Shown: piece by piece, positions 1 through 8,712 of the stretch
Layout of the letters: each line of letters opens with the position of its first letter
How positions within the stretch are numbered: the first letter of the stretch is position 1
NCBI GenBank assembly: GCA_964035545.1
Contig: CAXIUT010000283.1
Coordinates: 1-14,108, forward strand
DNA: 14,108 bases
Direction of reading: 5' to 3'
From: Bugula neritina
Taxonomy: Eukaryota; Animalia; Bryozoa
Notes under the pieces: model-generated
What the model saw: only the letters and a program-made list of their open reading frames with translations
What the model was told of the DNA's origin: nothing
Database searches by the model: none
Translations under genes and position numbers: made by a program

Positions 1-87
1 CCCAACCCCAACCCCAACCCCAACCCCAACCCCAACCCCAACCCCAACCCCAACCCCAACCCCAACCCCAACCCCAACCCCAACCCC
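1..87 (+). repeat. Left telomere, (CCCCAA)n, about 14 units (Tetrahymena-type C4A2)
   Basis: Perfect tandem CCCCAA from base 1, C-rich strand at the 5' end as expected for a left chromosome end. Confidence 0.97.
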
Positions 88-1066: not shown

Positions 1067-3110
1067 TCAAAAGTCTTGAGCAGCTTAAAGTCTATCTCCT
1101 CTACAAACACCACATCCTAAACAATACTAAGCCCCATTCCCTCCATGTTCGCCTCCTACAGGACACTTCTCTTTACCTTCACATCTGGGCAATTTCTATT
1201 TAGGAAGTCTAGAAATATATTATCCTGAAACCTGTTTTTTATGGCATGAATCACAAAAATGAGTATTGCCCCAACAAAACCATTGAGCCACTGAACAACA
1301 AAAACGACATTTGAATGAAATATACTCCTTCCCGTGCTTTTTACAATCAGTCATCTGAACAGGACAACATGAAGGACATATCAACTCTTTTGGGTTGTAT
1401 TTTTCACCATCGCGGGCCTAGTTCATTGCCTATGCACAGTTTTTGCGACCTCCAAAGTAAGGATCTCCACACTCAAAACATTGAAAATAGGCATAAATAG
1501 CCATAGCAAATTTAGTCTAATTTTTATAAAAAGGAGATTTGGGATCAGCTAATTTTTAGTTTTTTTATTCATGTTAATGTTTCAACCTCTTCAAAGCTTT
1601 ATCTTCAATCTTTTTAAGCATAGCTTTAAAAGTATTCAATTCTTTAAATATCGAGCAATCTTAAGGTATATCCATCCACTGATTGCAAAGAGGACACTCA
1701 CAAAAGCGAAAAGTTATCCTTGGACTTCCCCACTTGAGTTCTATTCTCTTCTTGAGACATTTCAAATGGAATATATGTCCACATTTAGATTGAACTGCTG
1801 GTGCCTAACCCAATGCTTCTACATAGCACAGACTGCAATAGCTGCTTTAATTTTAATTATGAAGTTTATCTGCTATTTTCAAGGCACATTCTTCTTTCAA
1901 GCAAGGTAGACAAGATCTTTCCTTGATAATTCCTCCACAACTATGACCACAAGGCAACTTCTTGCTACAGGCTTCTTTCATCTGCTGATAGCACTCCTTT
2001 GAGTCACAAATATCATCAAAAGTATGGATCCCTGAGTCGCTCATATATCCCTTTGGTAATGGTTTTCTGCAATATCTACATTTCCTGTATAATAAAATAG
2101 ATACTTTTTAGCCTTATGTTCTAGGAAGTCTTAACAATTGAATCCTAAATGATAAGGAGTTTCTCTACAATTTTTACACTGCTCTTGTTTACATTTAGGA
2201 CACTGAAATCTGTTTTATGCATAGTGTTTGGCCATTGATGGAACTATTGCCATTCCTTCTTCATTTTTCTTAGGAGCATCTGAAGCCTTTCCTTTTTCAA
2301 ACTGATATTGTTCTTTACATTTCTAGCATTGAATCAGAGTGAGTGCTTTTGAATTGAGTTAATTTTAAAGTTTAGCAAAGACAATTGGATCAGTTATGAG
2401 TTGAATTTGCAAATAAGGTATCTTAGCTTTGCATTTTTTACTGGGACAATGAAGTTCTCCTTTACTTTTAACATAGTTATTTCGAATATAATTTCTCAAA
2501 CAAAATAAACATATTGTGTGCAAACATTCATCCAGATATGTAAACTTCTCTATATCATTTAATTTGGCAGGATTTGTACAAAGAGAATCAACACATTATA
2601 TTTTTTATTAACTTTCTTAAAGAATATTGAAAGGGTCGTTAGGACCATAAAGATCTTCAATAACAAAAGTTGGATCTACTTTTGATGCCTTTAGAAGGTC
2701 CTTTATATCAACTTTATCTTCCACTATTGGTTTTAATTCCTATCTCTTTTCTTGTCTAGGTTTATTTTATTTTCTATTACCATTTTTATGTTGTTACTTC
2801 TCTTTACTTAACTATTTTTTTTATACTTTATCCATTATAAAAGGTTCTCCTTTATTTTATTGAATTTTCCTGGCAAGTTCCTATTTAACTAGATCCATTT
2901 ATTAGATTAAAAACTACATTTTATGACAATTACTTCCATATAATTAGGTGACATATGATCGATAAATCTTCGAATATTATGTACATAAGTTGGCACATAT
3001 TTTTTACATTTAAGGATATGTTCTTTAATATCCCAACTAGCAATAGACTAGTTACACTCAGGACAATTTACAACCTCACTTCTATGATCTCTTTTTGGCT
3101 ATTACTTCAT
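1067..3110 (-). CDS. E3 ubiquitin ligase, ~667 aa: C2HC zinc finger + RING1-like + IBR-like + MYCBP2/Highwire-type RING-H2 and tandem-cysteine (RING-Cys-relay) module
   Basis: Exons 3110-2934, 2913-2105 and 2084-1067; TGA at 1067-1069. C-terminal motifs KLPCGHSCGG..CLPCL, CSLCYVEAL, CGHIFHLKC, WGSPRITF..CPLC, YAYFQCFEC..PYFGGRKNC, ELICPSC, CKKHG..FKCRFCCSVAQWFCWGNTHFCDSCH and LGCGVCR follow the MYCBP2 C-terminus in order. The start may extend to ATG 3187, 3196 or 3208 through a further 20-nt intron at 3136-3155. Confidence 0.88.
2085..2104 (-). other. 20-nt spliceosomal intron GTATCTATTTTATTATACAG
   Basis: GT-AG. Removal joins IBR ...PYHLGFNC(E)DFLEHKAKK in frame to KCRYC. Confidence 0.88.
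2914..2933 (-). other. 20-nt spliceosomal intron GTAATTGTCATAAAATGTAG
   Basis: GT-AG. Supplies the frame change needed to join the N-terminal CPEC..EHILKC finger to the RING frame. Confidence 0.75.
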
Positions 3111-3258: not shown

Positions 3259-6200
3259 TCATGGCAACTTATTGCACCAAGGACAGTTAGCAAAGCAGTT
3301 CAAATAAGTGTTCCAGAACTCCTTTAGACCCCACTTTCCACAAGATCGACATTGCTTGCCATTCGAGCCGTTCACTGGATATCCAGTAAGCACACAAACC
3401 TCACTTCTGTTCTTACACTTGAAACAACTAACAGAAGCCTCATAGATCTTAGTGTTGCACTTCTCGCATGATCTTAAAGGTAAAGAACTATCGAATTTGT
3501 TGTTCATGCTCACCTCAAGAAGCCAATCCTTGATTTTTTCTTTTTCTCCTTCAGATACCATGTTTTTCATGGGCATATTGACATTGTAAGGAGAAGGAAT
3601 GTCAGTAATAGAAAATTAGTCATCTTCTGGTAAATTATTGTTGTCAGGATCATCAATGATTTAGTTGATATCGAGATATCTGTTGAGTAAAACTGATGCT
3701 AGTCCATAGATATTCTAAATAAATAAAAAAATACATTTTTTTGGCAGCTAAGACCTGCTTCATAGAATAGTTTATCCAATCGGATGAATTAACAATATCT
3801 TAGCAAAGAAACAGATATTTTCTGATGCAATTGCTGAGCTGCTGGCTTACGTTCATAAATGAATTTGAGGTTAGCCAAATGAGCAATTGTCAAGTAATTG
3901 TTGTATTCAATTAGAGTAGGAGAACCAGGTTAATTAGTACCTGATAGTAAGTTATAGAACTCAAAGAGAGCTTTTCTTAAAGGTTATATTTCTTTTTCTT
4001 CACACTCGACAAAAATTTATAAAGTCAACATTTTGTAAGTTGAATAATTTTTAGGAATAAGAGGCATTCCATAGGTTGCATAGGCCTGAGCAGCAGCTGC
4101 AAAGTTACCTCCCTCAACTGTAAATTTAATATATGAATTCAAATATTTATTTAGTAATTAAGGTCCTTTTTACTGTGCCTTATCCAGACAGTTATTCCAC
4201 TCTCCATTTTCTCTAAAGATGTCACAAGCAGTATCATAGTCTCCTATCTTAAGAGCTCCCCAAGGATCTCTTTAGTTTCTAACTTTTTTACCCTGCTTAG
4301 CATCAATCATATTGGTTAATTTCTCATTTAGTTCTGGATTTTTAATTAAATCAGTGCATTGCTTTGCAGCTTCATAATTTCCTCCTTAGCAATAAGTATA
4401 AACAGCTTATTCAAACAAATTCATTTGTTCAAGTAATTCACCAGCAGAATCGAAGGCTTAGATCTATCTCAACAACATACACACTTTTTTGACCACTCTC
4501 ATAGCTTTATCTTTCTCATAAGTTACAGCCAATTGAACAGCTCTTCTCCAAATCTGTTCTAACAACTGAGTATCCTTGAAATCATCAGGAGTGATATCTA
4601 GATATCCCTCAATAGCCTGAGAATAGTTTCGAGAATCATCCCATGTTTTAGCTTTTTGCAACTTCTGCTCAGGTGATTGATTACTCTGTGCTGGTTCCAT
4701 CCTCATCAGCCTCTCCACTTCATGGGGCATATGCTTTCTTGCTACTCTCAAAGCTTCTTGTAAGTTGTTCACCTCTACATACATCTTTATAGCTAGTTGA
4801 GGTTTGCGAGCGTTAATGTAAATAGCTTCAGCCTTAGGATATTCTCTTCTGTTGCCTTCAATATAACTTTTAGCTTGGTTAATTAAAATAGCATCACGGG
4901 CCTGTGGTTCATATTGACTAGCAACTGCCAAAGCTGAGTGGAAATCTCCAATATTTTCATACATACTGATAGCTTCCTGAGCCTTACCTGCCTTTACGAA
5001 CTCAACCTCTGCTTCTTTATATCTTTTTTAGTCTTCTAATTTCCAAGCAAATTTCAAATGAACATCTCTAATTTTATGTTTAGCATGTAGTCCAGCGATT
5101 TTAAAAGCTTCATCGAATTCTCCTTTATCAGATTGATATTAAACCACTGCATCAACCAAGTTCATTTTCAGCAACATTTTCATTCCTTGTTCTGGACCTA
5201 ATGACTCAGCCCATCTCTTAGCCAATTCACAGGTAAATTAATCTTTTCCATAGAGTTTAGAGCAACGAACAGCTTCTTCCCAAAGATTTTGAGTCTTATA
5301 CATTTCAACTGCAGCCCTCCAAGCTCCAGCAGATATATAGTGTGATTCTGCACTCTTGAAGTTTCCATCTTTATGCAATTTCTGAGCAACAGCCAAATGA
5401 GTCTCTTTCAAAAGATTTGATCTGTACTTTGATACAAGTCGAATCATGTTATCATACTGTTGACATTTCTTATACATAGCAATTGATAAATCGTACTCTT
5501 CTACAATTAAATACATTTTCTCTGCTTATTTCCACTTCTCTTCCTCTTCAAACTTTTTAGCCTGCTTCACGTATAAGTTGTTTATTTCACTTTAAGGTAA
5601 GTTTTCCTTAGCCAATCTTAATGCTTGTTCCCACTTGCCTGCTTGAGCGTACATCTAAAATGCATCTACTGGAAGAGCTGCCTTCAGATAATACTTTTCA
5701 GCGAAGTCATATTGACGAATTGAAGCAAAATGTTTAGCTATTTGACGATAGTAAGGACGAGCAACTTCTGGAGTTTGGTGAGTTAATAACTGAATAGCTT
5801 TGTTCCATTCACGAGCCAAAATAGCTGCCTCAATGGCTTTTTGAATCTTCTAAGCCTCGATGAAATGATTGATAGCAGCTTGATATTGTTTAATTGACAT
5901 CAAATAATTTCCCCATCTTTCTTACAAACTTGTGACCAATCTAGGTTCAGCGTTTTTAGCTAAATCTACAGCCTTTTTGTATGCATTTCCCTTAACATAG
6001 CAATCAAGAGCTTTTTGGAGCATATCCATTTCTTCATATAGTTCTCCTGCTTTTTAATGCATACTTCCTGAAGCAAGACTAGATGCAATTTTCTAGAGAA
6101 GCTATTGAGGGAAGCTAACATTAGAATTATAGACCACATTTGCAGCTCTAGCTGGAATACCACCTTTAAGATATAAATTAATAGCCATATTATGATCTCC

Positions 6201-8476
6201 TTATTCTTACTTGATTTCAGCAGCTTTTTCTTCTTGTCCAGTTTCCAACAACCAGTTATAATAATTTTTTTTCAATTCCTCAACATCAGGGTGTTTATAT
6301 TTTTCAGCGCATTTAATAGTTTAATCCCATTTATGCAATTCTTGATACATCTACATAGCTTCTTCAATTTAGTTATTTTCAAGTAGAAGTGATTCTGCTC
6401 TATGGAACTGTTTCTCCAAGACAGCCAACTTTGATTGCACTTTATAGTAGTTTATTCCATCTTTTCGACCGGTTTCTTTCTCATATGCCTCTAAAACTGA
6501 AATAATCTTTTGTAAATAAGTTGCCTTAGCGATATCTCCAATTGCAGAGTAACAGTGCTCAGCCACGTATATGTTCTGATTCTCAAGAGACATTTTAGCA
6601 AGAGCATTCCAGTTGGCTTCTGTCTAGTTGGTTAATTATGAGCTATCTAGGATTAAGGCAGCTTTTTCAAGATCTTTAGCCTACAAAGCAAATCCAAATT
6701 CAATCAAAGCTTCATTTAAAGTATAGGAAGAGGTTGAATTGCCACTACTATCTGAAACATTGACCTCAGTTTTTCCATTTTTCCTTTCAATCGACTCAAC
6801 ATCTCCTTTAATGTTATAGATAGTAACTTTTTCAGGATGATCAATGGAATACCAGACATTCAAATTTTGTCTATTTTGAGCTACAACAACCTAACTTGAA
6901 GGAACCCATTTAGCAAAAGTACAATAAGGCAGAAGGGTGCTCTTGGATAGAGAATTCAAATCATAAAGGTAGAGTTGTTTGCGTTTATCTTTAAAGAGGA
7001 GTTTGTTAGAATTAGCATTTAACTCCAAGTAATCAATTTTTGAGTCATGACTGATTTGACTAACAATACTGGAAGTTTGCAAATCGAAAAGAGAAATAGT
7101 TTGTAAATCCAATAGGTAAGCAATCATTTTAACTCCTTTTTCATTAATTCTGGCAGATATTAAGTTAGGTTTCATGTATTCTGTCCTGCAAGTACCTAAA
7201 GGTTCATTTCGACCGTATTCAACAAGAGTTAATTCACCAGCATTGGATATCATGCATAAATTCGGACTGCTAAAGTCAAATTTTTAATTTCCAGCACCTT
7301 TCCAGTAAATCTAACTACTTCTGTTGTTATCAATATCTGCAATAATAAGTGTCTCATAAGTGTTTCCAACTGCATATCGGTCATTATGGAAGTTTATCTT
7401 TGTAATTTCAAGACCGTTATGACTCTTAAGTACTGTTTCTTTTGTTGATCCCTCTACTTGTACTAGTACCTGACTTGGAGATACATAGTTTAATAAATAT
7501 TTTCCTTTTTTGAATTTCTTCACACTAGCATCATAGACATCGACTGATCCACACAAATTACCAATTACTAACTTGCTACCATCATTTTTCCAGCTAATAG
7601 ATGTCACAGTATAATAATTTTCAATAGTTTTGCATGTGTTTTCCTCCCACTGTCCTCTCTTGGCATTCAAGTTGTACACATAGTATCTATTGAAGTTTCC
7701 CATAGCTACTGTATCTCCTGAAGGATTAAATGAACAGACTGAAAAATCTTTAACTTTGTCTTCATGAGTATAATCAAATCTTTGAAGAATATTTCCATAA
7801 GTATCATAGAATGTCACTTTTTTATCATTTCCAGCAGCAACAATATTTTATCCGAAACCAAGAGCATAAGGTACTGAATGATGAGTAAAGATCTTTTTGT
7901 ATGATTGGTTTTCCATAGAATAAGCAAACACATTGCCATCAAGATGTCCAGATATAATAGTGCGGCCATCTCTAGCACTAGCCAATGACATACAGTATGT
8001 CTCCCCAGAATATAAAACACTTGATTTGTTTGATTTCAAAATACCCATTCTAACTTTTCCATCAGCCAGTCCAAATATCAATTCATTAGGATGATCTTTA
8101 GGCCATGTCATGCTCGTTACAGACGCACTGACAGGAAATTTGTTGCAAATTGCTTTCTTTTCACCCCATTCTAGTCCAACTTTGTATATGAACACGATGT
8201 TGTCACTTTGAGCCACAGCTATTTTTTGAGAATCAGGTGAGAATTCAAGTCCTCTAATAAGATAGCTTTTTTGACCTTTGTCTGAAGGTTTGGTTGGGAA
8301 CTTATCTTTTTTTTGTCCATTATCGTCAAAGAGATAGACGGTCTGAATAAAGGTTAAATTACTCTATCAGCAGCACCAACAGCAAACTTTCTGCCTGATG
8401 GAGCCCAAGTAATAGCAGCCACTTTTTTCATGCTGTCCTAAAAGGGCATCACGTTACCTGCGTATCTCAGCTTCAT
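3259..8476 (-). CDS. IFT172: Intraflagellar transport protein 172 (WD40 + TPR/solenoid), ~1725 aa
   Basis: Exons 8476-8363, 8342-3735 and 3714-3259; TGA at 3259-3261. The IFT172-like ORF fragments in the track between 4464 and 8216 all share one frame. Diagnostic motifs: KDKFPTKP, FSPDSQKIAVAQSDNIV, WGEKKAICNKF, NAGELTLVEYG, LIEFG, MYQELHKWD, AAINHFIEA, FYEAG, TDIP, IYEAS, CVLTGYP. Confidence 0.97.
3715..3734 (-). other. 20-nt spliceosomal intron GTATTTTTTTATTTATTTAG (IFT172 intron 2)
   Basis: GT-AG. Removal restores LDKLFYEAGLSCQKN|NIYGLASVLLNRYLD. Confidence 0.9.
8343..8362 (-). other. 20-nt spliceosomal intron GTAATTTAACCTTTATTCAG (IFT172 intron 1)
   Basis: GT-AG. Removal restores KFAVGAADR|TVYLFDDNG (human KFAVCTVDRVVLLYDEHG). 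Confidence 0.92.
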
Positions 8477-8640: not shown

Positions 8641-8712
8641 TTGGGGTTGGGGTTGGGGTTGGGGTTGGGGTTGGGGTTGGGGGTTGGGGTTGGGGTTGGG
8701 GTTGGGGTTGGG
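8641..8712 (+). repeat. Right telomere, (TTGGGG)n, 12 units (one G5 unit, last unit G3), internal to the window
   Basis: Reverse complement of the repeat at 1-87, in the correct orientation to cap the right end of segment 1-8640. Confidence 0.95.

What the first reader, a model, noticed from the sequence alone, without database searches (positions are those of the whole stretch)
1067..3110. Compact hybrid E3 ligase: RING1-IBR joined to a RING-Cys-relay module
Seen: a C2HC finger (CPEC..H...C), a RING1-like domain (CVDSLC...CLHTICLFC...CPSKKC, ~2595-2431) and an IBR-like domain (C(E)KC...FQCPKCKQEQCKNCRETPYHLGFNC). Where an RBR ligase would have RING2, there is a full MYCBP2-type RING-H2 plus tandem-cysteine domain. 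Both relay cysteines appear conserved: FGGRKNC (codon 1436-1438) and WFCWGNTHF (codon 1274-1276). Known: human MYCBP2 is a ~4600-aa protein that relays ubiquitin between C4520 and C4572 and esterifies threonine; RBR ligases use RING1-IBR-RING2. Inference: a ~670-aa protist enzyme merging two E3 classes, with two potential E2-binding RINGs and possible non-lysine ubiquitination. Similar architectures may already exist uncharacterised in other ciliates.
Basis: partly seen in the sequence, partly recalled or inferred. Interest (0 to 1): 0.75.

Follow-up and report, generated by a model that had tools for sequence, protein, structure and literature searches.

The report
Ciliate RBR-headed RING-Cys-relay ubiquitin ligase
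This ciliate gene encodes a 667-residue ubiquitin ligase that joins the front half of an RBR ligase (RING1-IBR) to a complete MYCBP2-type RING-Cys-relay engine; the design is real, but it belongs to a widespread protist family already in databases, for which I found no published study.

Summary
The gene lies on the minus strand, from ATG 3110 to TGA 1067. It has two 20-nt introns and 35 sense TAA/TAG codons that fit Glu.

Domain order:
- a UBZ4-like C2HC finger
- an E/K-rich linker
- an RBR-type RING1 and IBR
- a RING-H2, a helical linker and a tandem-cysteine domain

Stop-free pieces match the human MYCBP2 crystal chain at 4e-12 (RING) and 2.4e-18 (tandem-cysteine domain). A weaker piece (E 0.024) carries the cysteine aligned with C4520. 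The cysteine aligned with C4572, and the residues aligned with the active-site His and Glu, are also kept. No RING2 is detectable.

The architecture is not unique. In my sample, 109 of 128 fetched relatives of at least 450 aa carry RING1-IBR. They come from ciliates, amoebozoans, a stramenopile, a foraminiferan, Diplonema and Anaeramoeba, and some are auto-named "RCR-type E3 ubiquitin transferase". PHR giants from nematodes and dictyostelids share only the part after the IBR.

A Paramecium orthologue folds confidently and matches MYCBP2 (Z 19) and RBR RING1-IBR pairs (Z about 10).

Most likely it is an active relay ligase that esterifies hydroxyl groups, with RING1-IBR as an accessory E2/ubiquitin dock. 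I found no published description. Transcript data could not be reached.

The parts
1067..3110 (-). Whole gene: ATG 3110 to TGA 1067-1069. The spliced CDS is 2004 nt (667 aa), with 35 in-frame TAA/TAG codons read as Glu.
   Evidence: frames and splice model; one continuous local alignment of aa ~165-660 to Paramecium P0152/P0015 (E about 1e-127) and dozens of others.
2934..3110 (-). Exon 1 (aa 1-59), carrying the N-terminal finger.
   Evidence: Its frame differs from exon 2, so an intron is required. Homologues carry the same finger at their N-terminus.
2914..2933 (-). Intron 1: 20 nt, GTAA..TAG, A at -6. The exact position is inferred.
   Evidence: It is the best of four GT-N16-AG candidates in the interval the frames allow. 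It lies in a non-conserved linker.
2105..2913 (-). Exon 2 (aa 60-329): E/K-rich linker, RING1 and IBR.
2085..2104 (-). Intron 2: 20 nt, GTAT..CAG, A at -6.
   Evidence: Alignments to homologues run straight across this junction.
1067..2084 (-). Exon 3 (aa 329-667 plus stop): middle zinc module and the RCR module.
3006..3065 (-). UBZ4-like C2HC finger, C16-x2-C19-x11-H31-x3-C35.
   Evidence: A profile of the homologues' fingers (A4) hits the RAD18 UBZ at 4e-8, the WRNIP1 UBZ at 6e-8, and also RAP80, FAN1 and FAAP20. The window's finger aligns over aa 14-35 at only 6.9 bits. Pfam hits on the homologues are below threshold.
2431..2595 (-). RBR-type RING1 (C3HC4): C166, C171, C189, H191, C194, C197, C215, C220.
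   Evidence: Pfam zf-C3HC4 at 8.2e-5 on the piece. The best PDB hit is HOIL-1 RING1. The family profile A2 hits ARIH2 at 1.9e-10, HOIL-1 at 1.8e-9 and RNF216 at 2e-9. The ligands are kept in 37-43 of 44 homologues.
2134..2328 (-). IBR (C6HC): C255, C258, C297, C300, C305, C308, H314, C319.
   Evidence: Pfam IBR at 0.0022 on the 27-aa piece. Homologue P0024 hits IBR at 1.2e-9. The A2 profile aligns to the ARIH2 IBR. In the Paramecium orthologue model, residues 136-300 match RING1-IBR of RNF216, HOIL-1 and ARIH2 at Z 9.6-10.2.
1886..2080 (-). Middle Cys-rich module with 11 conserved ligands: C331, C334, C355, C360, C368, C374, H376, C378, C387, C390, C395. It is shared with PHR-type giants. Its fold is unclassified and it is not a detectable RING2.
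   Evidence: ligands kept in 37-44 of 44. (giants align from aa 326 onward). No Pfam or PDB sequence hit for the piece or for profile A3. No structural match for the domain model.
1685..1837 (-). RCR RING-H2: C412, C415, C430, H432, H435, C438, C459, C462.
   Evidence: PDB 5o6c/6t7f MYCBP2 at 4e-12 on the piece. Several Pfam RING models hit below threshold. All ligands are kept in 44/44.
1496..1663 (-). Helical linker between the RING-H2 and the tandem-cysteine domain (aa ~470-525).
   Evidence: Long helix 435-460 in the orthologue model. It lies within the Z 19 superposition on MYCBP2.
1103..1480 (-). Tandem-cysteine (TC) domain, aa 531-656.
   Evidence: PDB MYCBP2 at 2.4e-18 and 0.024. All Cys/His ligands are kept in 43-44 of 44. 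Orthologue model against 6t7f: Z 19.2 with 240 residues aligned.
1436..1438 (-). C545, the upstream (mediator-loop) relay cysteine, equivalent to MYCBP2 C4520.
   Evidence: YFGGRKNC aligns with YFGGEARC, with the cysteine at chain position 143. It is kept in 43/44 homologues.
1274..1276 (-). C599, the downstream (substrate-facing) relay cysteine, equivalent to MYCBP2 C4572.
   Evidence: WFCWGNTHFC aligns with FFCFGTTHFC, with the cysteine at chain position 195. It is kept in 44/44.
1241..1243 (-). H610, aligned with the MYCBP2 active-site His (chain position 206, residue 4583).
   Evidence: alignment; kept in 44/44. The general-base role is described in PMC6769291. The residue number is from memory.
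1385..1387 (-). E562, aligned with the Glu of MYCBP2 'PRELIC' (chain position 157, residue 4534).
   Evidence: alignment; kept in at least half of the homologues. Its catalytic role is from memory of Pao et al. 2018.

Best explanation
The gene encodes a soluble, single-chain E3 ubiquitin ligase of the RING-Cys-relay (RCR) class.

**Shown**
- The C-terminal ~260 residues are a complete MYCBP2-type catalytic unit: RING-H2, helical linker and tandem-cysteine domain.
- That unit keeps every zinc ligand, both relay cysteines (C545 and C599), the active-site His (H610), the Glu (E562) and two of the three pocket aromatics (W600 and F605).
- In front of it lie a zinc module also found in PHR-type giants (nematode and dictyostelid), an RBR-type RING1-IBR pair without RING2, and a UBZ4-like finger.

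**Inferred mechanism**
1. A charged E2 docks on the RING-H2.
2. Ubiquitin is passed as a thioester to C545 on the mobile loop.
3. It is relayed to C599.
4. It is discharged, with H610 as general base, onto a hydroxyl group (Thr, then Ser) rather than lysine.

RING1-IBR belongs to the conserved ~500-residue core. It most likely acts as an accessory platform, either a second E2~Ub dock or an allosteric ubiquitin-binding site as in RBR ligases. The N-terminal finger probably steers the enzyme to ubiquitinated targets. Relatives carry C2 or ubiquitin-like domains at the N-terminus instead, so that end looks like the variable targeting part.
For: **Gene model**
-.

**RCR module in the window's own sequence**
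- The three stop-free pieces hit MYCBP2 chains 5o6c/6t7f at 4e-12, 0.024 and 2.4e-18.
- The cysteines align at chain positions 143 and 195.
- The chain numbering is confirmed.

**Family**
- There are 883 cluster representatives at E <= 1e-3.
- My local read-through model aligns in a single stretch, aa ~165-660, to Paramecium (1e-127), Diplonema, Nonionella and others.
- All zinc ligands and both relay cysteines are kept in 43-44 of 44 homologues.

**RING1-IBR**
- The family profile hits ARIH2, HOIL-1, RNF216, HOIP, RNF144A and CUL9 first.

**Structure**
- The Paramecium orthologue is 40.5% identical over aa 166-667.
- Its model has pLDDT 86.7.
- Residues 372-619 superpose on MYCBP2 4387-4636 at Z 19.2.
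- Residues 136-300 superpose on RBR RING1-IBR pairs at Z 9.6-10.2.

**N-terminal finger**
- The finger profile hits the RAD18 and WRNIP1 UBZ domains at about 5e-8.

**Variable N-terminal domains in relatives**
- C2 and ubiquitin-like domains are found there.

**Published mechanism of MYCBP2**
- The mediator-loop Cys, the second Cys, the His general base and the Phe pocket are described in PMC6769291 and PMC9120709.
Against: - No biochemical data exist for any member of this family, so activity, E2 partner and acceptor chemistry are all inferred from MYCBP2.
- The position of intron 1 is inferred.
- One pocket residue differs: Trp stands where MYCBP2 has Phe after the downstream cysteine. The third Phe could not be aligned.
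- The window's finger has Leu where RAD18 and WRNIP1 have Asp (H+2), and it scores only 6.9 bits, so ubiquitin binding is uncertain.
- The structure was predicted for an orthologue, not for this protein.
- The role given to RING1-IBR is the weakest step.
Confidence: 0.7

Rival explanations
1. This would be a functional RBR with a relay in place of RING2. RING1 would be the main entry point for E2~Ub, for example a Cys-reactive UbcH7-like E2. Ubiquitin would pass from the RING1-bound E2 to the mediator-loop cysteine C545, which would stand in for the RING2 catalytic cysteine, and then to C599. The RING-H2 would be structural or a second entry point.
For: - RING1-IBR is conserved, with all 16 ligands, in 109 of 128 relatives of at least 450 aa. 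This argues for a core catalytic role rather than decoration.
- Its nearest sequence and structure relatives are active RBR ligases caught with E2~Ub (RNF216 and HOIL-1).
- The RCR unit begins exactly where RING2 would follow the IBR.
Against: - The MYCBP2 fragment crystallised in 5o6c/6t7f lacks RING1-IBR. 6t7f is described as an E2-ubiquitin transthiolation intermediate of the RCR ligase.
- The RING-H2 here is closely similar to that RING.
- PHR-type proteins have no RING1-IBR at all.
Confidence: 0.2
2. The relay module is intact, but the enzyme modifies lysine or a non-protein nucleophile rather than Thr or Ser. Alternatively it is a regulatory pseudo-ligase.
For: - Trp replaces the Phe next to the downstream cysteine, and the third pocket Phe could not be placed.
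- No member of the family has been assayed.
Against: - His, Glu, the THFC motif and both cysteines are invariant or nearly so across 44 relatives.
- Sequence identity to MYCBP2 in the structural alignments of the orthologue model over the RCR module is 42-45%.
Confidence: 0.07
3. It is an artefact of gene modelling: two neighbouring genes (a RING1-IBR protein and a short RCR protein), or a pseudogene, wrongly joined by assumed 20-nt introns.
For: - No RNA evidence was obtainable.
- Intron 1 lies in an unconserved region.
Against: - After the two introns are removed there is no TGA in 2004 nt.
- Homologues from many lineages are continuous across the IBR-to-middle-module junction, where intron 2 lies.
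- Both introns fit the 20-nt, A at -6 pattern.
Confidence: 0.03

Closest known systems
[quoted passage not shown]
   Same: - RING-H2, helical linker and tandem-cysteine domain, with all zinc ligands.
- Both relay cysteines, the active-site His and Glu, and the THFC motif.
- A preceding Cys-rich module (aa 331-395) is also shared with the PHR-type giants from dictyostelids and a nematode.
- The orthologue model superposes at Z 19 with 42-45% identity.
   Different:
- No match to MYCBP2 or the PHR-type giants upstream of aa 326. RCC1-like, PHR, Myc-binding and F-box-binding regions were not searched for as such.
- It carries an RBR-type RING1-IBR and a UBZ-like finger, which PHR proteins lack.
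- On a quick tree the PHR-type proteins form their own cluster.
RBR ligases (ARIH1/2, HOIL-1, RNF216, HOIP, Parkin)
   Same: - RING1 (C3HC4 ending in CPxxxC) followed by a helical stretch and a C6HC IBR.
- The family profile and the orthologue structure hit RBR RING1-IBR pairs before any other RING.
   Different: - No RING2/Rcat and no catalytic cysteine in that position.
- The segment after the IBR matches no RING2 by sequence profile or by fold.
Unstudied protist proteins auto-named 'RCR-type E3 ubiquitin transferase', 'E3 ubiquitin-protein ligase MYCBP2' or 'myc binding protein 2' (Paramecium, Tetrahymena, Stylonychia, Dictyostelium, Polysphondylium, Anaeramoeba and others)
   Same: The same ~500-residue core: RING1, IBR, middle module and RCR. 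The window protein is 40.5% identical to Paramecium P0152 over aa 166-667 and groups with the ciliate members.
   Different: - N-terminal parts vary: a UBZ-like finger here, and C2 or ubiquitin-like domains in others.
- This copy is written in the TAA/TAG = Glu code.
- Its first RING1 cysteine pair is spaced C-x4-C rather than C-x2-C.
UBZ4 ubiquitin-binding zinc fingers (RAD18, WRNIP1, RAP80, FAN1, FAAP20)
   Same: C-x2-C-x11-H-x3-C spacing and the CPxC...H..C pattern. The finger profile of the family hits the RAD18 and WRNIP1 UBZ domains at about 5e-8.
   Different: The window's own finger scores weakly (6.9 bits). It has Leu at the H+2 position, where the aligned RAD18 and WRNIP1 fingers have Asp.

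Membership tests
RING-Cys-relay (RCR) E3, MYCBP2 type | RING-H2 (C3H2C3) homologous to the MYCBP2 RING | tested here: met
   The piece window:1664-1804:- hits 5o6c at 4e-12. The eight ligands are kept in 44/44 relatives.
RING-Cys-relay (RCR) E3, MYCBP2 type | Tandem-cysteine domain with its zinc ligands | tested here: met
   The piece window:1223-1417:- hits 5o6c at 2.4e-18. The ligands are kept in 43-44 of 44. The orthologue model matches 6t7f at Z 19.2.
RING-Cys-relay (RCR) E3, MYCBP2 type | Upstream relay cysteine in the mediator loop (C4520) | tested here: met
   C545 aligns with chain position 143 of 5o6c, which is residue 4520. This match is weak (E 0.024). The cysteine is kept in 43/44 relatives.
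RING-Cys-relay (RCR) E3, MYCBP2 type | Downstream relay cysteine (C4572) | tested here: met
   C599 aligns with chain position 195 of 5o6c. It is kept in 44/44 relatives.
RING-Cys-relay (RCR) E3, MYCBP2 type | Active-site His general base and aromatic pocket for Thr | tested here: inconclusive
   H610 and F605 are conserved. W600 replaces a Phe. The third Phe could not be aligned. The roles are as described in PMC6769291.
RING-Cys-relay (RCR) E3, MYCBP2 type | E2-dependent Cys-to-Cys relay and esterification activity | not testable with these tools
   This needs biochemistry.
RBR (RING-between-RING) E3 | RING1 of RBR type | tested here: met
RBR (RING-between-RING) E3 | IBR (C6HC) after RING1 | tested here: met
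   All eight ligands are conserved.
RBR (RING-between-RING) E3 | RING2/Rcat with a catalytic cysteine after the IBR | tested here: not met
   The segment after the IBR gives no RING2 hit by piece, by family profile or by fold. RBR superpositions on the orthologue model end at residue ~300.
PHR protein family (PAM/Highwire/RPM-1 orthologues) | Giant protein with RCC1-like, PHR and other N-terminal domains | tested here: not met
   The protein has 667 aa, and the giants align only from aa 326 onward. It falls outside the PHR-type cluster on the tree.
UBZ4 ubiquitin-binding zinc finger | C2HC finger homologous to the RAD18/WRNIP1 UBZ | tested here: inconclusive
   The homologues' finger profile hits the RAD18 and WRNIP1 UBZ domains at about 5e-8. 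The window's finger has the same spacing but scores only 6.9 bits and lacks the Asp at H+2. Pfam hits are below threshold.

The most novel reading that the evidence does not exclude
RING1-IBR-RCR proteins would be a fourth kind of thioester-forming E3, linking the RBR and RCR classes. RING1 would load ubiquitin from a Cys-reactive E2 onto the relay loop, so the tandem-cysteine domain would be the functional and evolutionary successor of RING2. Animal MYCBP2 would then be a derived form that lost RING1-IBR. The family would also give a compact, roughly 500-residue system for studying hydroxyl ubiquitination outside animals.
Probability: 0.2. Interest if true: 0.8.

Novelty: new variant of a known kind. 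Interest (0 to 1): 0.55.

Why it matters
The reviews I could reach treat RING-Cys-relay as a class exemplified by one giant animal protein, MYCBP2. One of them asks whether MYCBP2 is a lone example of a non-lysine E3.

This gene and its relatives show that the relay engine is old and widespread in protists. There it usually comes in a compact protein headed by an RBR-type RING1-IBR. That has three consequences:

- It offers a small, expressible enzyme for studying the relay and ester-forming chemistry.
- It raises a testable question about how two E2-binding RINGs cooperate.
- It bears on how the RBR and RCR classes are related.

The interest is limited because the architecture can already be read from public databases, and because nothing here is biochemical.

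Tried and rejected
- **Middle module as a degenerate RING2.** Rejected as untestable or unsupported. The window piece gave no Pfam or PDB hit. Family profile A3 gave none either. The domain model (pLDDT 81.6) had no VIA match at Z >= 2 among 48,161 chains, and only E of about 1 in Foldseek.
- **RNA evidence.** I did not try another route, and read laying was not used.
- **Paralogues in the same assembly.** There are none. Only the gene itself matched, both with the TC piece and with the Paramecium RCR part.
- **Literature.** Eight searches found no description of an RBR-RCR hybrid or of protist RCR enzymes. The only mention was a passing 'mycBP2/Highwire-like' label for a Dictyostelium giant. 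Mabbitt et al. 2020 (PMC7610530) is not held.
- **ESM Atlas look-up of the TC piece.** It returned only unnamed ciliate and echinoderm clusters.
- **Joined protein not sent to remote tools.** Remote searches used stop-free pieces by reference or homologues as proxies. The joined model, translated with table 30 from /data/window.fa, was used only in local scripts.
- **Uniqueness to one organism.** Considered and rejected.
Full report
**Observation**

The stretch 1067-3110 holds one minus-strand gene. Only TGA acts as a stop, and 35 TAA/TAG codons lie in frame.

Three reading frames are used in turn. Two 20-nt GT..AG introns, each with A at -6, join them into a single 2004-nt CDS of 667 codons:
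- intron 1 at 2933-2914
- intron 2 at 2104-2085

- RING1, C166 to C220, at 2595-2431
- the FGGRKNC cysteine at 1436-1438 (C545)
- the WFCWG cysteine at 1274-1276 (C599)

The position of intron 1 is inferred. It is the best of four GT-N16-AG candidates in an unconserved linker. Intron 2 is supported by homologues that align straight across the junction.

**How the searches were run**

I therefore searched stop-free pieces by reference and used homologues as proxies. The joined, table-30 model was built only inside local scripts from the window file and was never sent to a remote search or fold tool. I did not try another route.

**The RCR half**

Three pieces of the window hit the crystal chains of human MYCBP2 (5o6c, 6t7f):

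| Piece | E-value |
|---|---|
| RING-H2 | 4e-12 |
| Mediator loop | 0.024 |
| Tandem-cysteine | 2.4e-18 |

The chain covers residues 4378-4640, and the residue ranges confirm this numbering. The aligned residues are:
- C545 falls on C4520 (YFGGRKNC against YFGGEARC).
- C599 falls on C4572 (WFCWGNTHFC against FFCFGTTHFC).
- H610 and E562 align with chain positions 206 and 157. From memory of Pao et al. 2018, these are H4583 and E4534.
- F605 matches a pocket Phe.
- W600 replaces another pocket Phe.
- The third pocket Phe could not be placed.

PMC6769291 describes the mediator-loop cysteine, the second cysteine, the His general base and the three-Phe pocket.

**The RBR half**

The window evidence is modest:
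- The RING1 piece passes Pfam zf-C3HC4 at 8.2e-5.
- Its best PDB hit is the RING1 of HOIL-1.
- The 27-residue tail of the IBR hits Pfam IBR at 0.0022.

The family evidence is stronger:
- A profile of the RING1-IBR segment from 60 relatives (A2) hits ARIH2 (1.9e-10), HOIL-1 (1.8e-9), RNF216 (2e-9), HOIP, RNF144A and CUL9 before any ordinary RING.
- Local hmmsearch places the window's aa 169-323 on that profile.

All eight RING1 ligands and all eight IBR ligands are conserved.

**What lies between the two halves**

After the IBR comes a module with eleven conserved Cys/His residues (C331 to C395).

It is not a detectable RING2:
- There is no Pfam or PDB hit for the piece or for the family profile A3.
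- The domain model (pLDDT 81.6) finds nothing at Z >= 2 among 48,161 chains.
- Foldseek returns only generic cross-brace look-alikes at E of about 1.

The module is shared with giant PHR-type proteins. Two dictyostelid proteins of about 3400-3500 aa and a nematode RPM-1 align with my model from aa 326 to about 660, which is exactly from the end of the IBR. These giants have no RING1-IBR.

**The N-terminus**

The finger C16-x2-C19-x11-H31-x3-C35 recurs at the N-terminus of many relatives. A profile of twelve such fingers hits several UBZ domains:

| UBZ domain | E-value |
|---|---|
| RAD18 | 4e-8 |
| WRNIP1 | 6e-8 |
| RAP80 | 0.0015 |
| FAN1 | 0.0076 |
| FAAP20 | 0.11 |

The window's own finger aligns over aa 14-35 at only 6.9 bits. 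It has Leu where RAD18 and WRNIP1 have Asp. I therefore call it UBZ4-like with uncertain ubiquitin binding. Pfam hits on the homologues stay below threshold.

**Relatives**

The tandem-cysteine piece finds 883 cluster representatives at E <= 1e-3, and 358 at <= 1e-10. My local model aligns in one stretch, aa ~165-660, to proteins of 500-800 aa:
- ciliates: Paramecium (1e-127), Tetrahymena, Pseudocohnilembus and Stylonychia
- Euglenozoa: Diplonema
- a foraminiferan: Nonionella
- a stramenopile: Platysulcus
- Amoebozoa: Dictyostelium and Polysphondylium
- Metamonada: Anaeramoeba

Of the 128 fetched proteins of at least 450 aa, 109 have RING1-IBR and 119 have the middle module. Some are already auto-named 'RCR-type E3 ubiquitin transferase', 'E3 ubiquitin-protein ligase MYCBP2' or 'myc binding protein 2'. 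Some carry C2 or ubiquitin-like domains at the N-terminus.

I ran a quick FastTree on the shared unit. It has local SH-like support only, no bootstraps and no real root:
- The window protein groups with Paramecium and Tetrahymena (support 95 and 99).
- The eleven PHR-type proteins without RING1-IBR form one cluster (support 92) among RING1-IBR bearers.
- The other rows scored as lacking RING1-IBR are short fragments.
- Which state is ancestral cannot be said without a root.

**Structure**

The Paramecium orthologue P0152 is 40.5% identical over aa 166-667. It was folded with a 70-sequence family alignment, giving pLDDT 86.7 and pTM 0.66.

Foldseek ranks 5o6c and 6t7f first (E 3.7e-25, TM 0.76-0.80), followed by RBR ligases. 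VIA-align gives:

| Model residues | Match | Z |
|---|---|---|
| 372-619 | MYCBP2 4387-4636 | 19.2 |
| 136-300 | RING1-IBR of RNF216 | 10.2 |
| 136-300 | RING1-IBR of HOIL-1 | 9.6 |
| 136-300 | RING1-IBR of ARIH2 | 9.6 |
| 136-300 | RING1-IBR of Parkin | about 7.4 |

No RBR alignment extends past residue ~300.

**Genetic code**

Recoded codons fall on the following columns of the alignment of my model with 44 homologues built:
- codon 499 (TAA): Glu in 38 of 44
- codon 648 (TAG): Glu in 40 of 44
- codon 320 (TAA): Glu in 25 of 44
- codon 406 (TAA): Gln in 22 of 44, at a variable position

Summed over all recoded columns, Glu is the commonest residue (266, against 104 for Gln). The Glu reading is favoured.

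**Mechanism**

What is shown is a complete RCR catalytic unit with all known catalytic residues, preceded by a conserved RING1-IBR.

What is inferred is the reaction path:
1. E2~Ub docks on the RING-H2.
2. Ubiquitin is transferred as a thioester to C545.
3. It is relayed to C599.
4. It is discharged, with His assistance, to a hydroxyl group.

I give this 0.7. The main rival (0.2) is that RING1 is the real entry point and the relay loop replaces RING2. Strong conservation of RING1-IBR in the core argues for that rival. Two points argue against it: the crystallised MYCBP2 fragment lacks RING1-IBR, and PHR proteins have none.

**Membership**

By every sequence and structural feature tested, the protein is a member of the RCR kind. 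It is not an RBR, because RING2 was tested and not met. It is not a PHR orthologue.

**Novelty**

Eight literature searches found no description of this architecture or of protist RCR enzymes. The only mention was a passing 'mycBP2/Highwire-like' label for a Dictyostelium giant. Reviews present MYCBP2 as the example of the class.

The architecture is nevertheless visible in public databases through automatic names and precomputed Pfam hits. I therefore rate it a new variant of a known kind, of moderate interest, and not unique to this organism.

Other notes from this scan concern the same stretch. A word search found no earlier report of an RCR gene on other DNA.

Noticed in passing
window 4-87 and 8641-8707: (CCCCAA)n lies at the left end and (TTGGGG)n lies internally. 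Together they bound an 8.7-kb telomere-capped ciliate minichromosome. The record continues past the internal telomere to 14108, so two molecules appear to be joined in one contig.
   Followed up: partly
window ~3259-8476, minus strand: The neighbouring large gene has WD40 propellers and an IFT80/172/WDR35/WDR19-type TPR region. Pfam hits on its stop-free pieces are below threshold. From memory, its N-terminus reads like IFT172. Its last piece (3262-3576) is Cys-rich.
   Followed up: partly
whole assembly G000 (216 Mb, 321 contigs); window = C292: Another note from the scan describes a bryozoan gene in this same assembly. This contig has ciliate telomeres, the TAA/TAG = Glu code and 20-nt introns. 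It is therefore probably from an epibiont or contaminant ciliate rather than from the host animal.
   Followed up: no
window 2914-2933 and 2085-2104: Both introns of the gene are exactly 20 nt, GT..AG, with A at -6. This agrees with the scan's separate note on introns in this window.
   Followed up: partly
proteins P0078 and P0104 (Synstelium and Acytostelium, ~3400-3500 aa) versus P0183, P0196, P0198, P0202 and P0203: Dictyostelids hold both kinds of RCR protein. One kind is the PHR-type giants without RING1-IBR. The other is compact RING1-IBR-RCR proteins, one of which (P0183) also has a C2 domain. The two architectures therefore coexist in one lineage.
   Followed up: partly
protein P0167 (Paramecium primaurelia, 1065 aa): This protein matches the RING1-IBR profile and the middle-module profile twice each. 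That suggests a tandem duplication of the front half or a fused gene prediction.
   Followed up: no
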